This document shows, one piece after another, positions 4,574 through 23,117 of a DNA stretch of 32,719 bases. Source of the stretch: Fonticula alba ATCC 38817. Taxonomy: Eukaryota > Protista > Nucleariida. The notes under the pieces were generated by a model, which saw only the letters and a program-made list of their open reading frames with translations, had not been told where the DNA came from and searched no databases. The stretch lies in the NCBI GenBank assembly GCA_000388065.2, contig KB932207.1. The stretch is one strand, 5' to 3'. Position 1 is the first letter of the stretch; the number at the start of each line of letters is the position of its first letter. The translations under genes were made by a program, and so were the position numbers.

Positions 4574-4666
4574 ATGACGACCATGTCTGCGACCTCTGCT
4601 GCCCCGCCCAAGTCTACCGTGCGTTGCCCTCCCTCCCCGCCCCCCCCCCCCCCCCCCTTTGCATCC

Positions 4667-4741
<75 letters not shown>

Positions 4742-4749
4742 CCCCCCCC

Positions 4750-4789
<40 letters not shown>

Positions 4790-7109
4790 CCCTCCTCCCC
4801 TCGCTATGACTGACCGCGTCGCGCCGCCCCTCGCCGTAGACATGTGCTTCCAGGACCTCACGGCCAGCCACCAGCCCGACATGCTGGGCACCGTCACCGG
4901 TGCCGGCCTCATCGGCCAGCAGCTCACGGTCCCGCTCACCCTGTCCCCCCACCCGGTGTACACGCTGCCGATGCTGAGCGTTTCGGCCACCAAGGGCACC
5001 GGCATCGTGGTGTCGGTCCCGTCCGACTCGCCGGACGACTTCGCCGCCTTCCGCGACCTGAAGTCCAAGCCGGCCTTCTGCGAGAAGTACGATGTCGACC
5101 ATGCCTGGGTGCGCGACGTGTCGCCGGTGCACATCATCGATGTGCCTGGCTACTCCGGGCCCTGCGCCGAGATCGCCTGCGACGAGTTCAAGGTCCAGTC
5201 CCAGAACGATGCCGTCGCCCTGGCCAAGGCCAAGGACGAGGCCTACAAGCGCGGCTTCTATGAGGGTGTCATGCGGGTGGGCGCCCATGCCGGGGCCAAG
5301 GTCGAGGAGGCCAAGCCCCTCATTCGCCAGGAGCTCCTGGCCGCCGGGCAGGCCGTGGTCTACTACGAGCCGGAGGGTCCGGTCATGTCGCGCTCGCTCG
5401 ACGAGTGTGTCGTGGCCCTGGTGGACCAGTGGTTCATCGACTACGGCGATGACGAGTGGCGCCAGACGGCCCTGCGCTGCCTGGCCCGCATGAACATCCC
5501 GGCGCGCGAGACCCAGAACCAGTTCGAGGCGGTCTTCAACTGGCTCGGCCAGTGGGCCTGCTCCCGGAGCTTCGGCCTGGGCAGCCGCGTCCCCTGGGAC
5601 GAGCAGTACCTGATCGACTCGCTGTCCGACTCGACCCTCTACCCGGCCTACTACACGGTGGCGCATCTCCTGCAGCAGGGCGCCCTGGACGGATCGGTCG
5701 TTGGCCCGGCCGGCCTGGCCGCCGATGCCATGACCCCCGATGCCTGGGACTTTGTCTTCCTCGGGACCGAGCCGGCGGCCGATGCCCCGGCCGCCGCGCA
5801 TCTGGACCAGCTGCGCGCCCTGCGCCGGGAGTTCCTCTTCTGGTACCCGTGCGACATGCGCGTGTCCGGCAAGGACCTGGTGCCCAACCATCTGACCATG
5901 TACATTTACAACCATGTGGCCCTGCTGGAGGAGCGCCACTGGCCCGGCGGTGTGCGCACCAATGGCCACCTCCTGCTGAACATGGAGAAGATGTCCAAGT
6001 CCACCGGCAATTTCATGACCCTGGAGCAGGCCGTGTCGGCCTTCGGGGCCGATGCCGTGCGCATTGGTCTGGCCGATTCCGGCGACACAGTGGAGGATGC
6101 CAACTTCCAGTCGGAGCTGGCCAACAAGGCCATCCTGCGTCTGCATGCGCAGCTCGACTGGACCCGGACCTTCCTCCGGGACCAGGCCAACCCGGCCACC
6201 GCCCTGCCGGTCAAGGAGCCCTCCGCCTACACGCACCATGATCTGGTGTTCCTGTCGCGCATGAGCGAGGCCATGGCCGGGGCGCTGGATGCCTACGAGC
6301 GGACCATGTACCGTGAGGCTCTCAAGTGCGGCTTCTTCGACATGCAGGCCGCGCGTGATCGCTACCGCGATCTGACCGCCTCGGCGCCCACCCCGGCGGC
6401 CGGGCCCTGTGGCGGCCTCCTGCGCCAGTTCATCGAGTACCAGGCTCTCCTGCTGGCGCCGATTGCCCCGCACTTCTGCGAGTATGTGTGGCAGGATCTC
6501 CTCGGCCACGAGGAGTCGGTCACCGCCAGCCGCATGCCCACCCCGCCGGCCGTCGACCGGATTTGCCTCATGGCCGACACCTATGCCGAGGAGGTCATCC
6601 ACCGGATGCGCCTGGCCCGCGAGGCGGCCATCAACCCGCCCCGGCCGCGCGTGGCCAAGGGGGTCACCCCGCCGCCGCTGGTGGTGTACGCCTCCCCGGT
6701 CCACTGCCGGCTGACCGTCACCCGGGCCTTCACCCCGGTGCAGCTCGCCGTCCTGAGCGCCCTGCGCGAGAACTACTCCTCGGCCACCGGGGAGTTCACC
6801 CTCCCGGAGAAGGACATCCGCGATCGCGCCCGCAAGAGCCTGCCCGACCCCAAGAAGGACACCAAGGTGGCCATGAACTTCTTTGCCACGGTGCTCACCC
6901 GGTTCGAGCTCCTCGGCGAGTTTGCCTTCAACGACCAGCTGCCCTTCGACGAGGCCCACATCCTCGGCGAGTACAAGGACTACATCCTGTCCTCCTTCGG
7001 TCTCAAGGAGCTGGACATTGTGGACAATGTGGCCGACACCCTGGCCACCCCCTGCGTGCCGGAGATTGCCTTCACCCTCCGGGTCAAGGAGGACGAGGCC
7101 CAGGAGTAG
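4574..7109 (+). CDS. LARS1: Cytosolic (eukaryotic-type) leucyl-tRNA synthetase; N-terminal ~330 aa including the HIGH motif absent from this assembly. Putative first exon 4574-4618, main exon 4840-7109
   Basis: Main exon encodes the CP1 editing motif GTGIVVSVPSDSPDD, WACSRSFGLG, SDSTLYPAYY, SGKDLVPNHLT and KMSKS. Branch-like CTGAC and TAG acceptor at 4810-4839. Upstream MTTMSATSAAPPKST followed by a GTGCGT donor at 4619. The 5' structure is uncertain. Confidence 0.93.
4641..4790 (+). repeat. Interrupted poly-C tract (about 150 nt) inside the LeuRS gene; likely assembly collapse point
   Basis: Near-pure C run seen directly. Confidence 0.9.
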
Positions 7110-7962
7110 GTGCAGGTGTGTTGACCGGGCCGCCGCCTGCCGCCGAAGACGGGCGAGATGTGATATGCCGGACACGCGCGCGCGCGCGCGCGCGCGCTCC
7201 CTCCCTCTCTCTCTCTCCCCGCCTTCCTGTTTTCCCCAAGCACCGAGCAGGTGGTGGTGCAGGCTGCCTGCCTCACGACCATATCCCCCTCCCCCCTCGC
7301 CCTTCTCCTCCCCTCTGGCTCCTCCTTCTCTCGGCTCCCGCTCTGTGCACGCCTCCCTGCTGCCGTCCGTTCGGCGGGGGCGCAAGGAGGCGACCAGCGA
7401 GCGAGGCGCATCGGGCCTGGACACCGTCCATCGTGTTGCTGCATGATGCACGGCATGTATGCATGAAATACCAACAGAGTAGCAATATATACACACACAC
7501 GTCGATCGTGTCCCCTTCTGCAGTTCCGCGCTTTCTTTCGAGGGGGGAGGAGGGGGGACGTCCTGCCTACGTGCATGTGCAAGGCCGCCCTCCTGCCGTT
7601 TCTGGCCCGCATCGCTCCCACGAGCAGGGAGCACCTGTTCACCTGGCCGGGGATGATCACATGCCCACGGCCATGCGCCGGTCAAAGCACCGAGTCTTGC
7701 GTTGCATGCGATCTGGGCCGAGCGGCGTCCCGCGGGCTGCCCCATGCCCGCACGCCGGGGCCTCCCCACGTAGGTGCGATCGTGTGGCCTTGCTCTTTTG
7801 CGGCCCACGCTGCGCCTCGCCCCAAAGAGGGGGTGCGATCGCGGCGCCTCGGCCAACCGGTCGTGAAGACAACAGTGATCCACTCCCCCCCCCCCCCCTC
7901 CCACCCCTTCTGTGCTCTTCCCCTTTGCCCCTGTTCCCCCCTCCCCCTTCCCCTCTTCTGAC

Positions 7963-8574
7963 ATGACCGAGAAGCGCAAGCGCAGCGAGGAGTCCGACAC
8001 CTCGGCCCCTTCTGACCCGGTGGACAAGCTGCTGGCTGGCCTGCCGGAGGTGAAGCGCACCCGCGGCGGGCGCCGCAAGGCGCAGGCTGCACCTCCTGTC
8101 GAGGAGCCTGCCGCCGTGGCGGAGTCTCCGGAGGTGCCGGCCGACGACAAGAAGGCCGACAAGCCGGCCAAGAAGGCCGGGCCGCCGAAGTTCATCGTCT
8201 TCGTCGGGAACCTTCCCTACAATGTCAAGGCCGAGGAGGTTCGCGAGGAGCTGTTCAAGCCGCTGGTGGAGTATGTGCGCGATGTGCGCGTCCGCGCGGA
8301 GAAGGGCTTCGCTTTCGTGGAGTTCAAGAACTACACCTCCTACAGCATGGCCATCCGCATGAACAAGACCTCCTTCAAGGGGCGCGAGGTCAAGGTCGAG
8401 GCCACGGTCGGCGGCGGCGGCAACAGCGCCGCCCGCAAGCAGAAGCTCATGAAGAAGAAGGTGGAGATGAACAAGAAGGTCCATGTCCAGCTGAAGACCA
8501 TGCTGGACGACTCGCGCCTCAAGGGGGCCATCTCGCGCGCCACCGCCGCCGGCAAGCTCCCCGAATCGTCGTAG
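7963..8574 (+). CDS. NOP6: Nop6-like nucleolar RRM RNA-binding protein, 203 aa, single exon
   Basis: RNP2 FIVFVGNLPY and RNP1 KGFAFVEF. The post-RRM motif VEATVGGGGNSAARKQKL matches Nop6 VELTVGGGGNS..R..KL. Lys-rich termini. Confidence 0.85.
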   Translation: MTEKRKRSEESDTSAPSDPVDKLLAGLPEVKRTRGGRRKAQAAPPVEEPAAVAESPEVPADDKKADKPAKKAGPPKFIVFVGNLPYNVKAEEVREELFKPLVEYVRDVRVRAEKGFAFVEFKNYTSYSMAIRMNKTSFKGREVKVEATVGGGGNSAARKQKLMKKKVEMNKKVHVQLKTMLDDSRLKGAISRATAAGKLPESS

Positions 8575-11340: not shown

Positions 11341-11750
11341 NNNNNNNNNNNNNNNNNNNNNNNNNNNNNNNNNNNNNNNNNNNNNNNNNNNNNNNNNNNN
11401 NNNNNNNNNNNNNNNNNNNNNNNNNNNNNNNNNNNNNNNNNNNNNNNNNNNNNNNNNNNNNNNNNNNNNNNNNNNNNNNNNNNNNNNNNNNNNNNNNNNN
11501 NNNNNNNNNNNNNNNNNNNNNNNNNNNNNNNNNNNNNNNNNNNNNNNNNNNNNNNNNNNNNNNNNNNNNNNNNNNNNNNNNNNNNNNNNNNNNNNNNNNN
11601 NNNNNNNNNNNNNNNNNNNNNNNNNNNNNNNNNNNNNNNNNNNNNNNNNNNNNNNNNNNNNNNNNNNNNNNNNNNNNNNNNNNNNNNNNNNNNNNNNNNN
11701 NNNNNNNNNNNNNNNNNNNNNNNNNNNNNNNNNNNNNNNNNNNNNNNNNN
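11341..11750. other. Assembly gap (410 N)
   Basis: Run of n in the sequence. Confidence 1.
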
Positions 11751-13539
11751 CCCCCCGCCCCCTCTTTCGGAGCTCGGCGGGCATATTGCATGCCCCGCCG
11801 CGCGCTTGGCCGCGGCCCACTGCCCTCCTCGCCGTGCCCCCGCCCGAATCTTGCACACATCCAAACAAACGCCTCCACACATCCAGCCAGCCAGTCAGCC
11901 AGAAAGGCAGACAGACAAGTCCATCAGAGAGGTAACTGCGGCCTGGGCGAGGGGCGGGAAAGGATGGACTGCCACCTCCCAAAGGATCCCCCCCCCTCCA
12001 GCTGTGGATGCTCTCGCGAAAAGAGCTTATCCGGGTTTCCGACTGCGCGCCACCCGTTCTCGCCGTCCCCCCGGCCGTGCCCTCTCGCGGCCGCCGCAGT
12101 GCCGGGACTTCCCGCGGGGCCGAATCGTGGGGTAGACGTTCTCGCCAATGGAGGCGGCCGAAGAGACGACCATCGTGAATGGGCATATCACTGGATATCC
12201 CAACGAAGCCAGTGTGACTGGCAAACCGGGCGCACGCCTCAGAACGCCCGCCACCAGAACGCTGGCCAACGTATGCGGGTCCTCCGCCTCCCAGCCCGGG
12301 GCTCACGCTCGCCGGCCTCGGGGGGGGGCGGGCGCGGCAGGAAGGGGCTGCCACACGACCTGTGCCGGAAGACCGAACAGGGCCCGCGCCCCAGGGTCCC
12401 CCCGCCCCCCATCCCTCGGAGAGGGCCTCGCCCATCTGCGCGCGGCAAGCAGCCTCCCCGAAGTGAGGTCCATGGTGGGACCCCGGTTACGGAAGAACCG
12501 TTCGCCATGGCCCGGGCAGGCCAGCCGGTGCTGAGATGCACCCCCGACCGAAACCGGCCAAGGAGGCCCGGCCCCTCAGCGCCCAAGGCCGCGGGGCGTC
12601 AGCACGCGCACAACCCCCCCCCCCCCTCCTTTCCCCGGAGCACAGGGGGCATGTGTATGCGCGTGTGTCGTGCTTTGGCGCCTGCGAGTGCCCGTGTGCG
12701 TGTGTGACAGCCCCGCCGGGGAGGGCCTGGCGCGCGGCGTGACCCGCGTCCTGCCGCCGCGCCGGACCGGGTTAATTTAATCCACGCGCGAGGAACACAC
12801 TTCCGCCGCGTGGGCACATGATATGCCGCGGCGCGGCGTGGTCAGATCTCGGCGCGCGCGGCGCGCGCGTTGTCTCTCGGGCCAGCGATCCGGGGGTGCC
12901 TGGCGCGCCTCGGCGCACATGCAGCCACACGGCCGGCGGGGCCCATCGTGCGGAGCAGCGAGCGCGGTCGACACGAGGGGGGGGGGGGGGACCGCCCAGG
13001 CCCCGTTCGGGTCGGCGGCCTCTCCGCTCCCCCTTCAAGGGCCTGCCCAATCTCCCAGGCATGTGTGCTGCCGGATAGATCCCCCTCCCTCTCGCCCCTC
13101 CCCTGCCCCGCGCACTCTTCCCTGCCCCCTCCCCCTTGGTCCTTCTCCCTCTTTCCCTCCTCCTTCCCAAGCCCACCCCCTCTCCTTCCTTGCCATCTGG
13201 CTTTGTTGCCCACACATACATCCCTCCCCCCCCCCCTTGTCCCTGGTCTCTCGTCTCCCCTGCCACCAAAGCGTGCCCCGTTCGCCGCCCCGCCCTCCCA
13301 TCCCGGCATCCCTCTTGGCTTAGACCTTCCGCTGGCGAGCGCGGCCAAGATGTACGCCCGCCCTGTCTCTCTCTCTCTCTCTCTCTCTACCTCTGCCGCA
13401 CCCTCCATCCCTCCCGCCTCGCAGGATCTTCCCTCATCCTACCATCCCCTTCTTGCTCACCCTCCCCTCGCTCCCTGGCCTCCTCGCTCCTCCTCCTTCA
13501 GATCGACCAAGCGCGCGCGCGCCCTCTGTCCCATCAAAC

Positions 13540-16500
13540 ATGATGTCCCTTCCGTATTTGCTCACCCGGCCGGCCGGCCAGGCTGCATTCACCATGCCGC
13601 AGTGGGCCCCGGGCTCCGGGCTACTCCTCGCCCGGGCTCTGGCCACCTATCATTCCGGAGCCGGAAACCAGGATGAGAATAGCGTCAGTTTGAACATTTT
13701 CAAAGCCGCTCGTCGTCGAGCGCCGGCCACCTCGGCCTCGGCATCTGCCGCCACCAGCACCGCGGCCGGGTCCGCCGCCGCCCCCGAGGACCCCGGCTCG
13801 GGGAGCTGGGCCGCGCGCCAGCACGCGCAACTTGCCCGGCACCCGGATCGCAAGGGCAACCCCGGGTATGCCTATCTTGCAGGGTTTGGCACCATCTCCG
13901 AAGGGGGCAACAATGCAGCCCCGGAGGGAGAGGCCGAACCGACCGGCGACGACAAGGAACTTGCCCCTGCGGCCCTGCGGCGGCAGAAGCGCCTCTTGCG
14001 CCAGCGCCAGCGGTCGCAGTCGCGCAAGTCGTCCGACCACCAGTGTGACCATGATCACAGCTGTGGCGATGATCATGACGATGCCGATGATGCCGATGAT
14101 GCCGATGATGCTGATGGGACGGACGGTGTTTATGACAGCGCTGATGAGCACCACACCGCGTCGGACTGCGACCATGACCATTCCCACGGCCACGGCTCCT
14201 CCCCCGCTGGCGGCCAAGCCAAGCGGCCCCCCTCGCGCCGGGCCGCCAACCACCGGTCCCACTCATGGTCCAGGAGTGCCATCTCCCCGGGCGAGGTGAA
14301 GACCTTCATGCGCCGGGTCAAGGGCAACATGTGTCTGCTGTGTGGCACCCACCCAAGCAGCCAGCCCTGCCTGAATCCGCAGCTCCAAAAGCTCGGGCTC
14401 ACCTTCATCCACAACCGGAATCCCTTTTCCTACATTTCGGCCCAGGAGTACTCCTTCTCCTCGGCGTGCGTCTTTTGCGGCGAGGTGAACCACGCGTCCG
14501 CCGACTGTCGCCTTGCCCGGCGCATCGGCGTCAGCTACTCGCCGAATGGGTTTTCCCGGCCGTCGGAGCTGACCCTGGCCCTGTCGAGCCAGGGCCTGTG
14601 CTCCTTTTGCCTGGCCCCCCACTCGTCATGGGACTGCCCGGATCGGCCCTACTACGCCGGTGTTTCGACGCCGGTCCCCTGCAAGGACAGCCAGGCTCTG
14701 AGCCAGCGCTTTTCGGCCGACCTGTGCGTGGTGTGCGGCAAGCACTCCTATGCCGATGTCTGTCCGGAACTCCTGTCCCAGGGGGTCATCTATGTGGGGC
14801 ATGCCTTTCCCTTTGGCCGCCTGGTCAAGGACGTGGCCCGGAGCCAGCACGCCCTGGCCATGACCCCGATGCTGACCACGCCGGTGCGCATGCCGCCGCA
14901 TTTCAACCGCGAGAACTACCCCAACATGGATCCGCGGTCGTTGTCGGTGCTGGAGCAATTCTACCGCCTGCGCAAGGAACAGGGCTTCACCCTGCAGCCG
15001 GATCAGTGTGCCATTTGCGGGCTGACGCACCCGGTGCCGGGGCTTTGTCAGCCGGCTTTGCGGGCTGGCTACCGGTTTACGCATGACTTCAACCGGTACA
15101 TCTATTCCTCGGCTCTGGTCCGCTCAGCGGCCCAGGGGACCCTGTCGAACAATTTCCACCAGCGCTCGGCCACCCCCTTCGGCGACCCCTTCTTCACGGC
15201 GGCGATCCAGGGCCAGCGACTGAACCCGCGCCCGTGGGCTGAGGGCGAATCGGCGAGCGGCTCGGCCGCCGGTTCCCCGGCCGTCGGGTCCATGTTCACC
15301 GGCACGGGCATGGCCAATTACCCGGATGACCAGTCTCTCGGCGAGTCAGACGAGCTGACCCCCGGCATCTCGCTGACCCCCTTCCGGACCATCCCTCCCA
15401 CCGGGATCCGGGGCCAGGAGCCGCGCATCATCCAGCCGGCCAGTCGCGTGCAATTGTCCAATTCCCTGCGCCTGTTGAAGTCCATCGGGACCAAGGTCCA
15501 CCACCGGTTCTTGCCATACTCCAGCCTCCTGGCCACCGAGGGACAATCCCTGTGTGGCTATTGCTTCGAGCATAGTGCGCACTTGCCGTGCCCGGTTCTC
15601 CAGCGCCTGGACATCTTGCTGCAGTACAACATCTTCCACCTGCCGGCGCAGGCGACCCAGGACCAGCGCCTCCGCGAGGGCTTGTGCCCGGTGTGCGGCA
15701 CCCATCCGGCCACGGTGTCCTGCTTCCTGTACGACGTGCTGGCATTGGACCCGCGCAATCCGCTGCTCCGGCTGCCGGGGCTGATGTCCACGCGCAATGA
15801 CCTCGGCATGTGCCGGCTGTGTGGGCTCCACGCCAAGGACACCCCCTGCCGGGCCATCAACAGCCTCGGCTGGGAGGTCAACTCGCATGCCTTCAACATG
15901 CGCAAGACCCGGCAATACCCGCTGGAAATGAATGGCATGTGCTCCTTCTGCGGGCGGCATTCCAATACGGAGGCCTGCCCGCACTTCCCCTCCACGTCGG
16001 CCCTCTATGTGCGGAATACGCTGGTCGTGTCGCCCTTCATGCAGGAGCTCTCCTCCCGGCATGACATTTGCCCCACCTGCTTCGGGCACAGCCAGCTGAG
16101 CAAGTGCCCGGTGGCGCATCAGGTCAATTTGCGCACCTACCCGCGCTTCCAGAACCCCATGCTGCCGGTGACCGTGCGCAAGCAGGGGCTCTACTATACG
16201 CCGGAGCCGCACCCGGATCCCATCTACCTGCCGGATGAGCAGGTGATGGTGGTGCGCCGGAGCCAGATCGGGGAGATATGTGCCATTTGTCTGAAGGACC
16301 ATCCTCCCTCGGAGCGCTGTGTGTCCCTCTTTGAGGGGGAGAATTTGGTGCAATTGCGCAAGCAGCTGTACCGCCGGGCGGTGGCGTCCACCATTTGCGA
16401 GATGTGCCCCCTGTGCTCGGCCCATCCGCTGGATGAGCCCTGTCCGTACTACCTGTCGCCGGAGCGCCTGACCCGGGTGCGTGTGACGCAGGAGCGCCGG

Positions 16501-17568
16501 GCGGAGCGTGCCCGGCGCGAGGGCCTGCCCATTCCGTCCAACCGCCCGGGGCGCAATCCGCACCACTCGGCCGGGCCCGGCATCGCCGGGACCAACAGCC
16601 AGCAGCCCCTGGACTCGATGATCATCACGGCGGTGGTGTCGCATGGCGGCCGCAAGGGCTCGGTCCTGCTTCGGGGCCGGCTGCACTTGCACCCGAATGA
16701 GCTGGAAGAGCGCCTGCAAAGCCAACGGTGCCTGTACTGTGGCCTGCATGGGAATGCCCAGCCGTGCGCCCTCATGGCGTCTCTCGGGTTCGTGGTGACC
16801 GGGCCCCATCGGCAATTGCAAATGGCGGCCGAGGCTCGTGCCGTGGCCGAGGACCTGGGCCTGTGCCTGCGGTGCTTCTCACATCACCGGTCGCGGCCGT
16901 GCGACGAGTCGGTGGCCAACAGCGCGGCCGGCCGGGCTGGCCTGCCGCTGGCCGTGTCGGATGAGCTCTTCGCGCGGTACTTTGATCCGGAATCGCCGGA
17001 CTTCCGGGCCCCCAGCGGCCCGGCCTCCCTGGGCACCGCCGGGCGCAAGATGAATGTCCTGCTGCCGGCCGAGTACTTCGAGTCCGTGTCGCCGGTCAAC
17101 TCGTCGCTGAACTTCTCGCACAACTTCCTGCGCACGGTGTCCATCATCCGGGACACCCTGCTCAAGAATCACATCTACAAGCCGTGTCTCTTCTGCGATG
17201 TGGTGCACGGGCATGAGCCCTGCCCGCAGCTGACCAAGCTGGGCTTCATCCACAATGGCCACTCGCGCAATCCGCTGCAGGTGCGCCTGGATGTGTTGAT
17301 TTCTCGGAATATCGCACGGAACTGCGGCATTTGCGGCTCGCATCCGGATTCGCTCGAGTGCCCGATCGTGGCGCAAATGGGCGTGCGCTTCGTCAACAAC
17401 CGCTTCTATCCCCAGACAAACATCGAGTCGAACAAGCGCAACCACTGCCACCTGTGTCTGCTGCACCTGGCCAGCGAGCAGTGCCCCTTCCTGTCGTTGG
17501 TTCACCAGTCGACGCCGACCCGGGCGCGCGATCCCCTGGCCAAGCTCCGCATTGCCAACAACCTGTGA
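13540..17568 (+). CDS. Large intronless protein with 17 tandem atypical CCHC zinc-knuckle-like repeats; probable in-frame extension through UGA to 17700. Start at 13540 or 13594
   Basis: ORF of about 1340 codons with 17 C-x2-C-x(2-4)-H-x(4-5)-C motifs from 14332 to 17484 and a His/Asp-rich N-terminal tract. Confidence 0.88.
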   Translation: MMSLPYLLTRPAGQAAFTMPQWAPGSGLLLARALATYHSGAGNQDENSVSLNIFKAARRRAPATSASASAATSTAAGSAAAPEDPGSGSWAARQHAQLARHPDRKGNPGYAYLAGFGTISEGGNNAAPEGEAEPTGDDKELAPAALRRQKRLLRQRQRSQSRKSSDHQCDHDHSCGDDHDDADDADDADDADGTDGVYDSADEHHTASDCDHDHSHGHGSSPAGGQAKRPPSRRAANHRSHSWSRSAISPGEVKTFMRRVKGNMCLLCGTHPSSQPCLNPQLQKLGLTFIHNRNPFSYISAQEYSFSSACVFCGEVNHASADCRLARRIGVSYSPNGFSRPSELTLALSSQGLCSFCLAPHSSWDCPDRPYYAGVSTPVPCKDSQALSQRFSADLCVVCGKHSYADVCPELLSQGVIYVGHAFPFGRLVKDVARSQHALAMTPMLTTPVRMPPHFNRENYPNMDPRSLSVLEQFYRLRKEQGFTLQPDQCAICGLTHPVPGLCQPALRAGYRFTHDFNRYIYSSALVRSAAQGTLSNNFHQRSATPFGDPFFTAAIQGQRLNPRPWAEGESASGSAAGSPAVGSMFTGTGMANYPDDQSLGESDELTPGISLTPFRTIPPTGIRGQEPRIIQPASRVQLSNSLRLLKSIGTKVHHRFLPYSSLLATEGQSLCGYCFEHSAHLPCPVLQRLDILLQYNIFHLPAQATQDQRLREGLCPVCGTHPATVSCFLYDVLALDPRNPLLRLPGLMSTRNDLGMCRLCGLHAKDTPCRAINSLGWEVNSHAFNMRKTRQYPLEMNGMCSFCGRHSNTEACPHFPSTSALYVRNTLVVSPFMQELSSRHDICPTCFGHSQLSKCPVAHQVNLRTYPRFQNPMLPVTVRKQGLYYTPEPHPDPIYLPDEQVMVVRRSQIGEICAICLKDHPPSERCVSLFEGENLVQLRKQLYRRAVASTICEMCPLCSAHPLDEPCPYYLSPERLTRVRVTQERRAERARREGLPIPSNRPGRNPHHSAGPGIAGTNSQQPLDSMIITAVVSHGGRKGSVLLRGRLHLHPNELEERLQSQRCLYCGLHGNAQPCALMASLGFVVTGPHRQLQMAAEARAVAEDLGLCLRCFSHHRSRPCDESVANSAAGRAGLPLAVSDELFARYFDPESPDFRAPSGPASLGTAGRKMNVLLPAEYFESVSPVNSSLNFSHNFLRTVSIIRDTLLKNHIYKPCLFCDVVHGHEPCPQLTKLGFIHNGHSRNPLQVRLDVLISRNIARNCGICGSHPDSLECPIVAQMGVRFVNNRFYPQTNIESNKRNHCHLCLLHLASEQCPFLSLVHQSTPTRARDPLAKLRIANNL

Positions 17569-17787
17569 CTTACCTGTGGCAACCATGAGTACCGCGAGGA
17601 CATGGCCAACTGCCCGCGTGCCGCCGAGGCGGCAGCCGTCCGCCGGTCGGCCGATTCCACCCGCCGCCGGACGGAGATGTCCCGGTTGCGCACCATGTGA
17701 TGGGGGACCGGCGGGAGGCCCTTTGCCCGGTCTTGTCTACTTCCCCCCCCCTCCCCCCTCCCCCCTCCCCTCTCCTCTCTTTCCTTT

Positions 17788-17822
17788 GCCCTCTGCCCTC
17801 TGCCCTCTGCCCTCTGCCCTCT
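17788..17822 (+). repeat. (GCCCTCT)5 heptamer tandem repeat downstream of the zinc-finger gene
   Basis: Seen directly. Confidence 0.85.
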
Positions 17823-18237
17823 GCCTCCTCCTGTGCTGGCGGTAGGGACACACACACACACACAGGCAGGGGGGGGGTCTGTGTGTGGTCACCCCCTAGA
17901 TGCACGCACACATGCATGCCACCTCTCCCCCGACGCAAGTGTGCACCGCACGCGCTGTGGCCCCACGATGCCCGAAAATAGACAATATCCAAAATCACAT
18001 GACCCCGCTCTCGCGATCGGGCTTTTCTCGCCCCGCCCTGTGTGCCGCGCGCAGCATGCCCCGCCACACCGCCCCCGCCCGCCCCTCCTCCTCCAGATCT
18101 TGCCGTCCGCCGTGCTGGGGTCTCCCCGACGTCTGCTCCGCCCCTCGCCCCCTCCGCCCCGCCCCGCCCCGCCCCGCCTCTTTTTTTCCCGCCGCCTCCG
18201 TCACCGGCTGCCCGTCCGAGCCTTCCCTCAGGGCGCC

Positions 18238-18727
18238 ATGCCAGCCTCGTCGGACAGGGGTCCGTCGATCGACCAGCCGGCGGGGTCGCCCGGGCCGGAT
18301 CTCCCCCTGGGCATGGCCGCTGACCTGGGGCAACCACTCGCGCCGCAGTCGCTGGCCTTGGTGTTGCAGTCGCCACCAGCCCCGGCCACCACCCCGGCCG
18401 CGACCGTAGCTCACGCTCTGCCGACCATGCCATCGGATTTCCACTTCCAGAGTCGCCTCAGCTCGGATCCCTGGTCGCTGGCGGCCCTGGCCCAAGCGTG
18501 GCGGCATGCTGAGCCCTTGCTGCCAGGGCCTCTGGCACGCCCCCTCTGCGAGGCCGACTCCACGCCCGGCCCATGGTGGCTGCCATCCTGGTGCCCTGGC
18601 GATGATCCACTCCTGGAGGATATGGAGTATGTGCCGCCCGCGGCTTCCCTGCTTTCCTGGGCGTGGCCCTCGCAGGTGTACTGATCTCCACCTGACCCCT
18701 GTCCCCTCACCTCTGTTCCCTCGCTCG

Positions 18728-18790
<63 letters not shown>

Positions 18791-20433
18791 GCGCGCGCGC
18801 GCCCGCCCGTCTATCTCCCCTTGTGTCCCCCTCTCGCTTCTTTCGGGCCCCCGGCTCACACAGTGTCGCGGCCCTCAAGCACGAGCACCTCACCCAGCTG
18901 GTGTTCCATGCGATTGACCCGCGGCCGCCGAGCACCTCGACACAGGAGGCCTCCGGCGAGACCGGGGCGCCGCGCTCGGTGGCCGAGCGTCTTGCCTCGC
19001 CCACCGCGCCCGTGTCATCTCAGCACCTCCTGCGGTCGGTCCGGCCAACGGGCGAGTCCCTTTGCCGGGTGAATGTGACGGACCTGCCCAACACCCGAAG
19101 CACATACCTGGCTGATGAGCCGACGATCGACCCGCGCGCGCGAGACGCCTTTCGAGCTCGGTATGGCGGCTCGCCCGCGGCCGGACCCGAGCAGGAGCTG
19201 CTGCTGGATCTGACGGTCTTCCTGCCGCCCTGCCTGACTCCGAACAGCTCGCAGACCCGGGCCCCGGCGTCCGGCAGGATGACGCACATCCGGGCCCCGG
19301 CGTCGGCCACTCTCGGGCACATTGCGAATCTGATCGCGTGCCCCCTGCTGCGGCCGGCGTCGGAAACGCCGGCCGAGACGAAAGGCGCCGCCGAGATCGC
19401 GCCCCCTGTCGCGGCCGACGGTGATCTCCCCCGCCCGGGGCGACTCTTCCTCGTGGAGGGGGTCCTGTATGAGGACACCCAGCATGCGGACGCCCCGTGC
19501 CTCAGCAGGTGCATGACCTATGACCACCCCTCGCGCCACGCCCAACATGCGGTGCTCACTCGCTGCGTTGCCCTCCATCGCCTCCGCTCCCCGCCCCCCT
19601 CCCCCCCCTCCCCTCCCCATCTCCCTAGTCACATCCAGGAGTGGGTGACCACACCCGGGCGATCGTTGCCACCACACCTATGCCCCCCGGCGGCTGGCAC
19701 CTGGCATCCGGGTCGCTCTGGCGAGAGGCATCCCCGGCTGGAGGTTCGCCCCCTTGGAACCCAGCGCCTGGATCAGATCCCCGAGGCGCTGCGTCTTTTT
19801 CAGCCCTACCTCTTTGCGCATGAGCTGGTGGATCCGCTGCTGCGGGGCACAGCCAGCGGGCATTCCATTTGCGAGCATGTTGTCTGTGTCACAGATGTCC
19901 GGTGCGTCTCAAAAAGGCGCCCCCCCCCCCCCCGCTCCTGCGAACAGATGCCCTGACCTTGGATTTGTGTGTCTACCGATCCCTCCTCTTTCCCCGCCGG
20001 CCCTGTCCCTCCTCCTCGTCCCCTTGTCCGGGCCTGGTGGGGGTCGTGAAGAACGCCCACGCCGTATGATTACAAGGTGCCCAAGCCGGGCATGCAGCCA
20101 ACTCTGGACCATCTGCCGGCGGCTCGGCAATTTGCCCGGCCCTTCGATGTCTATTGCGACGTTTGCCAAGATCGCCAGTCTAGCCATATGGTCCAGATTT
20201 CCGAGCAGGCAGCCTCGGCGATGGCCCTTCCCCAGTCGCCGGCTTTGTCGGGGAGCTCGGCCCCGGCCGATGCCCCAGCCGCCGGGACCAGCTTCCCCTC
20301 GCCCTTCGAGTTCACACACCTCTGCCAAGGGTGCTTCAATGCCCTGCTCTTCGATGCTGACGGCAATCCCCTCTGGGATACGAGCGAGCTGCGCGTGGTA
20401 TCCGACCATCCGGCGGCCGAATACAACGACTAG
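18238..20433 (+). CDS. SNAPC3: snRNA-activating protein complex subunit 3 (SNAP50), 4 predicted exons (18238-18677, 18864-19508, 19629-19901, about 20052-20433)
   Basis: LFLVEGVLYED, PYLFAH...CEHVVCVTDVR and CDVC...CQGCFNALLFDADGNPL match the SNAPC3 motifs (FFIEGTFYND, YLYCHQGDCEH, CxxC...CDVCFRMLHYDSEGNKL) as I recall them. First exon and last acceptor are less certain. Confidence 0.8.
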
Positions 20434-20654: not shown

Positions 20655-22610
20655 TCATACCAGCCCGGTCACAACATCGATTAAGCCCCCCTGGGCGGCC
20701 GGCTCCCCGGAGCCAAGAGGCTGCCAGGGATACCCAGCCAGAGGGAGGGTGGCGAGGTCGATGGCCCCATGGGTAAGGGCCGCGGCGTCCAGCGTCAGGG
20801 CCAGCTCCTGGGTGTCGCGCACGAGCACGGCCCCGGCGAAGCCCAGGGCATTCATGCTGAAGGTCAGCGTCGGGGAACCCTGCGGGCTGTCATTCTCCGG
20901 GGGCAGATCCGTCGATGCGATCACCGCGTCGCGGTTCTCGGTGAAGGACAGCGTCACGGCCGGGTGCTGGCGCGGGACGACCAGCAGCCAGCGCCGGGTC
21001 AGGAGAATGTTGGCCGACAGGACCCCCGGGCTGTCCAGGGTGTGGGCACAGTCAGCCGGCACCGGCCCGGCCGGGGGGAGCTTCGTGTCGGTGGCCGAGG
21101 CCAGGCGCTCCAAAGCCTGTAGGTAAAGGTGATGAACGGTGCTCGCCGCGCGGGGGGTCCACTCTCCGGGGACCGCATTCGGGGTGAAGGCCCGGCCGTC
21201 GGAGCTGGTCGCGAAATCCTCCGGGTCCAGCAGCGCCGCCAGATGCAGGAAGGGCAGCCGGTTCTCGGGCAGCTGGAAAAGGTGATTCGTCCGGGGAGGG
21301 GTTGCCTCTGTTGGTGCGTTGTGGGGGGGGGGGGACATGCGAAGAGTTGCGTCAATGTGGGACCGTGACAAAGTCGCACCGTGAGGCGGGGGGAGGGGGG
21401 CCAAGGAGAGAGAGAGAGAGAGAGAAAGAGAAAGAGAAACAGGGGGCCAGGAAGGGGGAGAAAGAGGGAAGGGAGGAACGAGGAGGGGGAGGAGGTCGGG
21501 CGCACGCTGTGATGTCCAGCGCTCGAGCACGCGGCTGATCGGCACCGCTGATGACTCCCATTCAAAGCCGGCTGGCGGGGTCTCCTGGGGCCGGTCATAC
21601 CCGCCGAGAGCCCAGCAGGGGAGGAGCTGCGCGTGGCGGTGGGCCTGTGATGCTCCGCTGTTGGCTCCGAGGTTGTAGAAGAGAATCCACTCGCCGGCCA
21701 GCTCGGCCAGGGTGAGGCGGGCGGCCCCGGGATCGACAGACCCATTGTCAACCGGGGCCCCATTGATGTCCATGTCGCAGGCGGGCGCCACCGACAGGGT
21801 CTGAAGCGCGCTGACGAAGGCGCGGCTGTCGGCCGCATCCCAGAGCCCCGTCTGGGGGGCGAAGTCTGTCATCGCACGGGCCGGCTAGCGGGGGGGGGGG
21901 GAGGAGGGAGGGTCAGGGGAATAGCGGCCATCGAGAGGGGGGACACCGGCAGGCAGCGGAAGAGAAGGCGGTGGGAGAGCGCAGGGGCTGCCCAGGGAAA
22001 GGGGTACCGGATGACACGACCAGAACATGGCCTTTGTCGACGGGGAACTTGTTCAGCAGAACCTTGTGGGAGGGGGGATTCTCCGCGGGGGCAGTGGGCA
22101 GATCGGCCACAAAGAGAGACGGATCGTGGGGGAGGAAGGGGTTTGGTCGCGGCCCAGGCGGCCGAGTGGACGGGCAGATGGCGCTCACGGCCGGGGGCAC
22201 CGCATCAACCAGGGAGTTACCGCCGGAGCACTGGCCGGGCGTGGGCTTTGCCGGTGCCTGGGGGGCGTTCTTCCTCGACAGAGAGGGGACCAGTCGAAGG
22301 GCAAACTGGTCCGGCGGCAAGAAGAGACGGACGATGGTGAGAGGACTGAATGGGAGGGGGGAGAGAGAGCGAAGGAGAAAGAAGAGAAAGGGCGGAAGGG
22401 AGAGCAAGGGCAGGGCCGAGAAAGTGGGCGAACAAAAAGATTGGGCCGTACCTCCAGGGCGTCGGGGCTGCGGCTGACACGAGTGACCCCGTCCGAGGCC
22501 GTTGTACAGGAGGACACGGCCGTGTGGCGAACGAGCGCCCCGGTCGCGAGGGCGTGGTTCCATGCCGACAGGACTGCCATGCGGCTCAACCCGGCGGGCA
22601 GGGGGGACAT
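20655..22610 (-). CDS. APA2: Diadenosine tetraphosphate (Ap4A) phosphorylase / ATP adenylyltransferase, Apa1/Apa2-like, 4 exons (22610-22452, 22305-22008, 21865-21506, 21307-20655)
   Basis: NPFLPHD, VLLNKFPVDKGHVLVVS, FAPQTGL, FYNLGANSGASQAHRHAQ (HxHxQ catalytic motif), NILLTRRWLLVVPR and MNALGFAGAVLV. Splice phases are compatible. Confidence 0.9.
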
Positions 22611-22709: not shown

Positions 22710-23117
22710 NNNNNNNNNNNNNNNNNNNNNNNNNNNNNNNNNNNNNNNNNNNNNNNNNNNNNNNNNNNNNNNNNNNNNNNNNNNNNNNNNNNNNNNNNNN
22801 NNNNNNNNNNNNNNNNNNNNNNNNNNNNNNNNNNNNNNNNNNNNNNNNNNNNNNNNNNNNNNNNNNNNNNNNNNNNNNNNNNNNNNNNNNNNNNNNNNNN
22901 NNNNNNNNNNNNNNNNNNNNNNNNNNNNNNNNNNNNNNNNNNNNNNNNNNNNNNNNNNNNNNNNNNNNNNNNNNNNNNNNNNNNNNNNNNNNNNNNNNNN
23001 NNNNNNNNNNNNNNNNNNNNNNNNNNNNNNNNNNNNNNNNNNNNNNNNNNNNNNNNNNNNNNNNNNNNNNNNNNNNNNNNNNNNNNNNNNNNNNNNNNNN
23101 NNNNNNNNNNNNNNNNN
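22710..23117. other. Assembly gap (408 N), adjacent to a (GA)n microsatellite, inside the short divergent promoter region between APA2 and RAB5IF
   Basis: Run of n in the sequence. Confidence 1.

What the first reader, a model, noticed from the sequence alone, without database searches (positions are those of the whole stretch)
14332..17613. Unrecognised tandem-repeat zinc-finger family: 17(+1) CxxCxxH-x5-C modules with ~30-aa linkers
Seen: 17 fingers. Twelve fit C-x2-C-x2-H-x5-C (e.g. CLLCGTHPSSQPC, CPVCGTHPATVSC, CRLCGLHAKDTPC, CGICGSHPDSLEC), four have x3 before His, and only one has the canonical Gag/CCHC spacing C-x2-C-x4-H-x4-C. In tandem runs the period is about 42-46 aa. Linkers recur as a hydrophobic helix ending in G (PQLQKLGLTF, PELLSQGVIY, RAINSLGWEV, ALMASLGFVV, PQLTKLGFIH, PIVAQMGVRF) and an R[ND]P[LF] motif. 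The repeats are highly diverged, so the expansion is old. I do not recognise this spacing as a named family. Inference: a modular nucleic-acid-reading scaffold analogous to PPR/PUF arrays, or a multi-zinc scaffold.
Basis: partly seen in the sequence, partly recalled or inferred. Interest (0 to 1): 0.75.

Follow-up and report, generated by a model that had tools for sequence, protein, structure and literature searches.

The report
Orphan zinc-knuckle repeat gene family
This gene of the amoeba Fonticula alba encodes a long protein with 17 copies of an undescribed zinc-binding module; it is one of at least eight such genes, found in no other organism searched, and the proteins probably bind RNA or DNA inside mitochondria, though that is untested.

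Summary
One open frame (ATG 13540 to TGA 17568, + strand) carries 17 Cys-Cys-His-Cys fingers: 12 are spaced C-x2-C-x2-H-x5-C, four have x3 before His, and one has the canonical x4/x4 spacing. Shuffled sequences give 0.06.

The genome is Fonticula alba. At least seven paralogues with 4 to 10 fingers share a 42-46-aa module. Its consensus is R-x3-G-L-C-x-[YF]-C-G-x-H-P-x3-P-C-P-x-L-L-R-R-G, followed by a hairpin and a helix.

No Pfam family, PDB sequence, PDB or viral fold, or ESM Atlas cluster matches. A repeat profile run against 1.84 billion proteins found only three Fonticula paralogues. The window's own gene is absent from those libraries, so it looks unannotated.

It is not a member of zf-CCHC: the spacing differs, PF00098 misses it, and hhalign gives 9.5% probability.

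AlphaFold models one module confidently as helix, knuckle, short helix and beta-hairpin. Seven of eight family N-termini look like mitochondrial presequences.

Best reading: a lineage-specific, probably mitochondrial, multi-zinc nucleic-acid-binding array. Zinc binding, location and ligand are inferred.

The scan met this family before on other DNA (s1-065424, s1-065637).

The parts
13540..17568 (+). Whole gene as read here: single open exon from the first in-frame ATG to the TGA stop, 1342 codons.
   Evidence: GC3 is 0.84. No product of this gene appears in either protein library, so it is apparently unannotated.
13540..13659 (+). Putative mitochondrial presequence, about the first 35-40 residues.
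   Evidence: No acidic residue before position 45. It is Ala/Leu-rich with two Arg, and ends in an R-A-L-A-T stretch like an R-3 processing site. Weaker than in paralogues L009, L012, L013 and L015. Inference only.
14044..14223 (+). Acidic tract rich in His, Asp and Cys, between the presequence and the array.
   Evidence: Similar DH[ED]H clusters occur in paralogues L009, L010 and L015. Role unknown.
14332..14763 (+). Fingers 1-4 in a tandem run. Spacing classes are x2/x5, x4/x4, x3/x4 and x2/x5.
   Evidence: Units 1 and 4 are individually significant against the paralogue-only profile.
15007..15048 (+). Finger 5, isolated, spacing x3/x5. About 170 residues without fingers follow it.
   Evidence: Weak on the paralogue-only profile.
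15553..16107 (+). Fingers 6-10, the longest tandem run. All are x2/x5, with a period of 42-44 aa.
   Evidence: This is the best BLAST match region to the paralogues. The 4-repeat AlphaFold model covers 15529-16053.
16279..16443 (+). Fingers 11-12. Finger 11 is x3/x5. Finger 12 is x2/x5 read from 16405, with an extra Cys just upstream.
   Evidence: plus hand reading. Unit 12 is significant.
16729..16902 (+). Fingers 13-14, both x2/x5.
   Evidence: Unit 13 is the best single unit at 38 bits.
17185..17484 (+). Fingers 15-17, spacing x3/x4, x2/x5 and x2/x5.
   Evidence: The 2-repeat AlphaFold model covers 17161-17436 with mean pLDDT 82 and above 90 over the second unit.
17566..17613 (+). Vestigial 18th unit. 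The stop TGA takes the place of Cys1. It is followed by x2-C-G-x-H-x8-C-P, and the frame stays open to 17697.
   Evidence: GC3 is 0.86 after the stop. No SECIS-like match downstream.

Best explanation
This is a real, apparently unannotated, single-exon gene of Fonticula alba. It belongs to a lineage-specific family of at least eight dispersed genes.

Each protein is an array of 4 to 17 copies of a 42-46-aa module. The module is an alpha-helix ending in Arg-Arg, a short Cys-Cys-His-Cys knuckle with the family-specific spacing C-x2-C-G-x-H-P-x4-C, a short helix (P-x-L-L-R-R-G) and a beta-hairpin.

Inferred: each knuckle holds one zinc ion.

Inferred: an N-terminal presequence sends the protein into mitochondria. 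There the basic, many-knuckle array binds single-stranded nucleic acid, most likely mitochondrial RNA. The variable knuckle positions (+1, +2, +5, +8 to +10) would give each paralogue its own targets.

The window's copy is the longest and most diverged member.
For: Shown:
- 17 fingers, far above chance, in a frame with coding codon bias.
- Seven paralogues share the module, and similarity is confined to the finger arrays.
- A paralogue-only profile finds all 17 units.
- Cys, Cys, His and Cys are invariant in the 56 units with x2/x5 spacing. Gly+4, Pro+7, Pro+11, Pro+13, Arg-6 and Leu-1 are strongly conserved. The knuckle-face positions vary.
- AlphaFold models two units at mean pLDDT 82, with pLDDT above 90 from the helix through the knuckle to the short helix that follows it.
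- There are no relatives outside Fonticula.

Supporting the inferences:
- Seven of eight N-termini have no acidic residue for 26-62 residues. They are rich in Arg, Ala, Leu and Ser and often end in R-x-L-[AS]-[ST].
- They resemble the N-termini of Fonticula GrpE and citrate synthase read from this genome.
- Seven of eight proteins have pI 8.0-10.0 and 7-10% Arg.
- From established knowledge, tandem CCHC knuckles such as retroviral NC, CNBP and the mitochondrial UMSBP bind single-stranded nucleic acid (UMSBP: PMC2192376, PMC2615610).
Against: - No experiment or transcript evidence for this gene was available here.
- The presequence of this particular copy is the weakest-looking of those that have one (two Arg, low hydrophobic moment). 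Start codons were chosen by eye.
- A basic stretch in the N-terminal region could equally be a nuclear signal.
- The four-unit model is poor (pLDDT 59, pTM 0.35), so no rigid reading scaffold is predicted.
- I could not obtain model coordinates to check that the four ligands converge.
- The module is not demonstrably homologous to nucleic-acid-binding knuckles, so the function rests on analogy.
Confidence: 0.4

Rival explanations
1. A general, non-specific nucleic-acid chaperone or single-stranded DNA binder of the CNBP/UMSBP type. It would sit in the mitochondrial nucleoid or in the nucleus, with no per-module recognition.
For: Ligand order, tandem arrays and basic flanks are as in CNBP and UMSBP (own knowledge; PMC2192376). 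The four-unit model suggests flexible beads rather than a fixed scaffold. This copy has a basic cluster upstream of the array.
Against: A family of eight old, highly diverged paralogues with variable knuckle faces fits diversified targets better than one generic job. There is no homology to canonical knuckles.
Confidence: 0.22
2. A protein-protein, metal-handling or redox scaffold. The zinc modules would serve as docking or metal-buffering units and would not bind nucleic acid.
For: Many small zinc modules mediate protein contacts (own knowledge). His/Asp/Cys-rich tracts near the N-terminus occur in four family members. The weak best hits are RING, LIM or PHD-like proteins.
Against: All of those hits are insignificant (E of 0.4 or worse). 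The conserved Arg pairs flanking every knuckle and the high pI point to a polyanion ligand.
Confidence: 0.15
3. A relic of a retrotransposon Gag nucleocapsid knuckle that was amplified. It would now be drifting, or be a decaying pseudogene family.
For: From memory, the stretch E-x3-R-R-x3-G-L-C-x-Y-C-G resembles the approach to the knuckle in many Ty3/gypsy Gag proteins. This copy is the most diverged, and a TGA falls on Cys1 of an 18th unit.
Against: Neither a Retrotrans_gag match nor a canonical Gag knuckle was found in this genome. A word search with P0003 gave no Gag protein at E up to 1. The frames are intact for 841-1414 codons, with all ligands kept and GC3 at 0.84, which means purifying selection.
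Confidence: 0.06
4. Not a gene: a chance open frame in GC-rich DNA.
For: It is not in the public protein sets searched. GC-rich DNA has long spurious frames.
Against: There are 1414 stop-free codons, third-position GC bias, 17 conserved metal-ligand sets and significant paralogues, three of them annotated proteins.
Confidence: 0.01

Closest known systems
Retroviral-type zinc knuckle arrays (Pfam zf-CCHC PF00098: HIV NC, CNBP/Gis2 with 7 knuckles, trypanosomatid mitochondrial UMSBP with 5)
   Same: Cys-Cys-His-Cys order. All four ligands lie within 13-14 residues. Gly follows the second Cys. Pro often follows the last Cys. Flanks are basic. Units come in tandem arrays. UMSBP is also mitochondrial (PMC2192376).
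   Different: Spacing is x2/x5, not x4/x4. There is no Gly-His. His-Pro and Pro-Cys-Pro are conserved. The aromatic residue is at +2, not +1. A structured linker of about 30 residues (short helix, hairpin, helix) replaces the few-residue linkers. PF00098 finds four cellular knuckle loci in this genome but none of this family. hhalign probability is 9.5%.
PPR, OPR, HPR and PUF helical-repeat RNA binders
   Same: A nuclear multigene family. Tandem modules of about 35-45 residues. A lineage-specific set of diverged paralogues. Probable organelle presequences. Conserved scaffold positions with variable surface positions.
   Different: The module is built on a metal site, not on helical hairpins. 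There is no sequence relation. The family is small (8 genes). A per-module recognition code is pure conjecture.
C2H2 zinc-finger arrays
   Same: Tandem zinc modules with conserved linkers, and lineage-specific families.
   Different: The ligand set and spacing differ (C2H2 with 12 residues between the pairs). The fold differs. There are no Pfam C2H2 hits above noise.
PHF7/G2E3 extended PHD finger
   Same: A local string L-C-x2-C-G-x-H aligns with the module.
   Different: E is 0.4 against the PDB. It is one segment of a larger cross-braced domain, not a repeat. The Foldseek hit to PHF7 has E of 8.

Membership tests
zf-CCHC (PF00098) zinc knuckle | Spacing C-x2-C-x4-H-x4-C with Gly-His | tested here: not met
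   Only 1 of 17 fingers here has this spacing. 56 units across the family have x2/x5.
zf-CCHC (PF00098) zinc knuckle | Match to the Pfam model at or above its cut-off | tested here: not met
   No zf-CCHC-type hit at E up to 10 for this protein, up to 1 for six paralogue frames, and up to 0.1 for L015, P0001 and P0002. A genome-wide PF00098 search hits four other loci only.
zf-CCHC (PF00098) zinc knuckle | Profile-level homology to true knuckles of the same genome | tested here: not met
   hhalign of A1 against 11 canonical Fonticula knuckles (A4) gives probability 9.5%, and the His columns are not aligned.
zf-CCHC (PF00098) zinc knuckle | One zinc bound by Cys, Cys, His and Cys | not testable with these tools
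   Ligands are invariant and the local model is confident. No coordinates or metal analysis were available.
LTR-retrotransposon Gag nucleocapsid | Knuckle lies C-terminal to a Gag capsid domain, or significant similarity to Gag proteins | tested here: not met
   No Retrotrans_gag in the family proteins or in the genome. No Gag hit in the word search. The control for rang nowhere, so absence from the genome is weakly shown.
PPR/OPR/PUF-type modular RNA binders | Helical-hairpin repeat fold | tested here: not met
   The model shows knuckle, short helix, hairpin and helix. There are no Pfam repeat hits.
PPR/OPR/PUF-type modular RNA binders | Organelle targeting | tested here: inconclusive
   Presequence-like N-termini in 7 of 8 members, similar to Fonticula GrpE and citrate synthase. 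No predictor or experiment was available.
PPR/OPR/PUF-type modular RNA binders | Sequence-specific RNA binding, one module per base | not testable with these tools
   Needs Bind-n-Seq or CLIP.
Selenoprotein (UGA read as Sec) for the 18th unit | SECIS element in the 3' region | tested here: not met
   No Rfam match at gathering score in the window. No SECIS at E up to 1 in 17400-19400.

The most novel reading that the evidence does not exclude
A zinc-knuckle-based counterpart of PPR/OPR proteins. This would be a nuclear-encoded, mitochondrion-targeted family in which each 44-aa metal module reads one or a few nucleotides of a mitochondrial transcript. The variable knuckle-face residues would act as a recognition code. 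That would make it a second, non-helical way to build programmable organellar RNA readers.
Probability: 0.15. Interest if true: 0.8.

Novelty: new variant of a known kind. Interest (0 to 1): 0.5.

Why it matters
The known modular RNA and DNA readers (C2H2, TALE, PUF, PPR) are the basis of programmable nucleic-acid tools. All organellar ones known so far are helical repeats.

A conserved 44-aa zinc module that has no Pfam family, no solved relative and no homologue in 1.84 billion proteins would be a new building block. It is kept in arrays across eight old paralogues with mitochondrial-looking leaders.

It would also hint at how a little-studied relative of fungi manages its mitochondrial genes.

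The finding also shows that at least five of the eight family genes, this one included, are missing from public protein sets.

Tried and rejected
1. Canonical zinc knuckle membership: rejected.
2. Gag or retroelement origin: the motif resemblance is recalled from memory only. No statistical support was found.
3. PHD-like (PHF7): E is 0.4, insignificant.
4. Fold searches of both models against PDB (Foldseek, VIA wide, VIA second look) and BFVD found nothing. Small metal modules score poorly, so this does not prove a new fold.
5. ESM Atlas gave no useful neighbour.
6. Conserved non-finger domains were sought by all-against-all BLAST and Pfam on all members. None were found.
7. c-type haem motif: the module is CxxCGxH, not CxxCH, so I rejected this by inspection.
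8. Sec recoding of the TGA: no SECIS.
9. An upstream exon for a better start: a candidate ATG at 13351 does not splice in frame (hand reading).
10. Neighbouring ORFs give no functional context. The only hit is an Ap4A phosphorylase-like ORF.
Full report
What is there

The window is GC-rich (about 67%) nuclear DNA of Fonticula alba. The organism name comes from earlier notes. It is confirmed by a paralogue that the databases call H696_00495 of Fonticula alba.

A single frame is open from 13324 to 17565. The first ATG is at 13540 and the stop is TGA at 17566-17568. Third-position GC is 0.84 against 0.50 at second positions, a clear coding signature.

A regular-expression scan finds 17 Cys-Cys-His-Cys fingers between 14332 and 17484. 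Read by hand, 12 are C-x2-C-x2-H-x5-C, four have three residues before His, and one has the canonical x4/x4 spacing. Shuffling the protein 2000 times gives a mean of 0.06 such motifs. In tandem runs the period is 42-46 residues.

It is a family, not a single gene

A six-frame search of the same genome with the array finds long open frames at seven other places on five contigs. They carry 4 to 10 fingers each:
- L009, 10 fingers
- L010, which is P0002, 8 fingers
- L011, 6 fingers
- L012, 6 fingers
- L013, which is P0001, 10 fingers
- L014, which is P0003, 4 fingers
- L015, 4 fingers

In the paralogues nearly every finger has the x2/x5 spacing, so that spacing is the family norm. The deviants in the window's copy are secondary.

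Aligning the 56 x2/x5 units in register gives this module: [LV]-[TS]-x2-E-x2-R-R-x3-G-L-C-x-[YF]-C-G-x-H-P-x2-[EQ]-P-C-P-x-L-L-R-R-G, then a hydrophobic stretch and Gly. The four ligands are invariant. Gly+4, Pro+7, Pro+11, Pro+13, Arg-6 and Leu-1 are strongly conserved. Positions +1, +2, +5 and +8 to +10 on the knuckle vary.

A profile built without any unit from this gene still scores this protein at 180.6 bits, with 17 domain hits on the 17 fingers. The best of 999 decoys scores 11.6 bits.

All similarity between paralogues lies in the arrays. No other shared domain exists.

Units are as alike between genes as within a gene, so the arrays are old and have not been homogenised. The window's units are the most diverged.

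Is it known?

- Pfam gives nothing for this protein at E up to 10 beyond two noise hits. It gives nothing for the paralogues either.
- The repeat profile against all PDB sequences gives a best E of 0.4, to PHF7.
- A word search of 5.8 billion proteins with the array found nothing. The same search with P0003 found only P0003 itself.
- The profile run by HMMER over 1.84 billion representative proteins found four proteins at E up to 0.001. Three are the annotated paralogues P0001-P0003. The fourth is a translated simple repeat.
- With 17 fingers this gene's product would have scored highly, so it is not in that library. L009, L011, L012 and L015 are missing too. These genes look unannotated.
- The ESM Atlas gave no useful neighbour.
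- The paper library has no use of this spacing formula.

The Pfam knuckle model PF00098 finds four ordinary cellular knuckle loci in this genome and none of this family. A profile-profile comparison of the module with those 11 true knuckles gives 9.5% probability, and the histidines are not aligned. The module works like a knuckle on paper, but it is not a member of zf-CCHC.

This is memory, not a test. The genome gave no Retrotrans_gag match (with a weak control), and no Gag protein scored.

Structure

A four-unit block (15529-16053) with a shallow alignment gave a poor model, with pLDDT 59 and pTM 0.35.

A two-unit block (17161-17436) with 25 in-register rows gave mean pLDDT 82 and pTM 0.67. 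Values are above 90 from the helix before the knuckle, through the knuckle, to the short helix after it. The beta-hairpin that follows scores lower (block mean 73).

The unit is helix, knuckle with a bridging pair, short helix, then beta-hairpin.

Foldseek against PDB and BFVD, and VIA-align against 48,161 chains, gave no match. Modules this small rarely score, so this is no proof of a new fold.

I could not read coordinates, so the convergence of the four ligands is not checked.

Where and how it may work

Seven of the eight N-termini have no acidic residue for 26-62 residues. They are rich in Arg, Ala, Leu and Ser, and several end in R-x-L-[AS]-[ST]. The eighth, P0003, may have a wrong start.

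They look like the N-termini of Fonticula GrpE and citrate synthase that I read from the genome as positive controls.

This copy's leader is among the weaker ones. Seven of eight proteins are basic.

Tandem CCHC knuckles are known single-strand nucleic-acid binders, and UMSBP is a mitochondrial example (PMC2192376, PMC2615610).

I therefore favour a mitochondrial, multi-zinc, nucleic-acid-binding array, probably on RNA, with paralogue-specific targets. Zinc binding, location, ligand and any recognition code are all inferred.

As context only: the Pfam PPR_2 model finds just one weak match in the whole genome.

The 18th unit

The TGA stop replaces Cys1 of a further, degenerate unit (x2-C-G-x-H-x8-C-P). 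The frame then stays open for 43 codons with GC3 of 0.86. No SECIS-like element follows.

A recent nonsense change or a base-call error is the simplest reading.

Limits

- The search for related loci could not use the alignment.
- No transcript data were available to me.

Earlier notes of this scan describe two paralogues of this family on other DNA (s1-065424, s1-065637). I used them as leads only.

Noticed in passing
window 17566-17700: The stop TGA replaces the first Cys of a degenerate 18th unit. The same frame stays open for 43 more codons with coding-like GC3 of 0.86. No SECIS-like element lies downstream. This looks like a recent truncation or a base-call error rather than recoding.
   Followed up: partly
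window 14044-14223; also L009, L010 and L015 products: Acidic tracts rich in His, Asp and Cys (DH[ED]H-type clusters) recur in four family members. In W, L009 and L015 they lie ahead of the finger array; in L010 the tract lies between its first two fingers and the main run. They may be an extra metal-binding region.
   Followed up: no
G000 loci L009, L011, L012, L015 and window 13540-17568: Five of the eight family genes give no product in either large protein library, although three paralogues do. They seem to be missing from the public annotation.
   Followed up: partly
G000:C9:947354-947458 (-): This is the only Pfam PPR_2 match in the whole genome at E up to 0.001, and it is below the family cut-off. 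It lies about 4 kb from paralogue L013. Probably coincidence.
   Followed up: no
window 20658-21872 (-): An ORF with Ap4A phosphorylase / ATP adenylyltransferase domains. The other long ORFs tested in the window, for example 4617-8195 (-) at 1193 aa, have no Pfam match.
   Followed up: no
window 11341-11750 and 22710-23117: Two runs of N (410 and 408 bases) account for the apparent low-GC dips in the composition profile.
   Followed up: yes
P0004 (library protein, not from this genome's family): A 180-aa protein made of a translated simple repeat (M-C-T-V-C-G-V-H-A-W-type units) was the only non-Fonticula hit of the repeat profile. It is an artefact, not a relative.
   Followed up: yes
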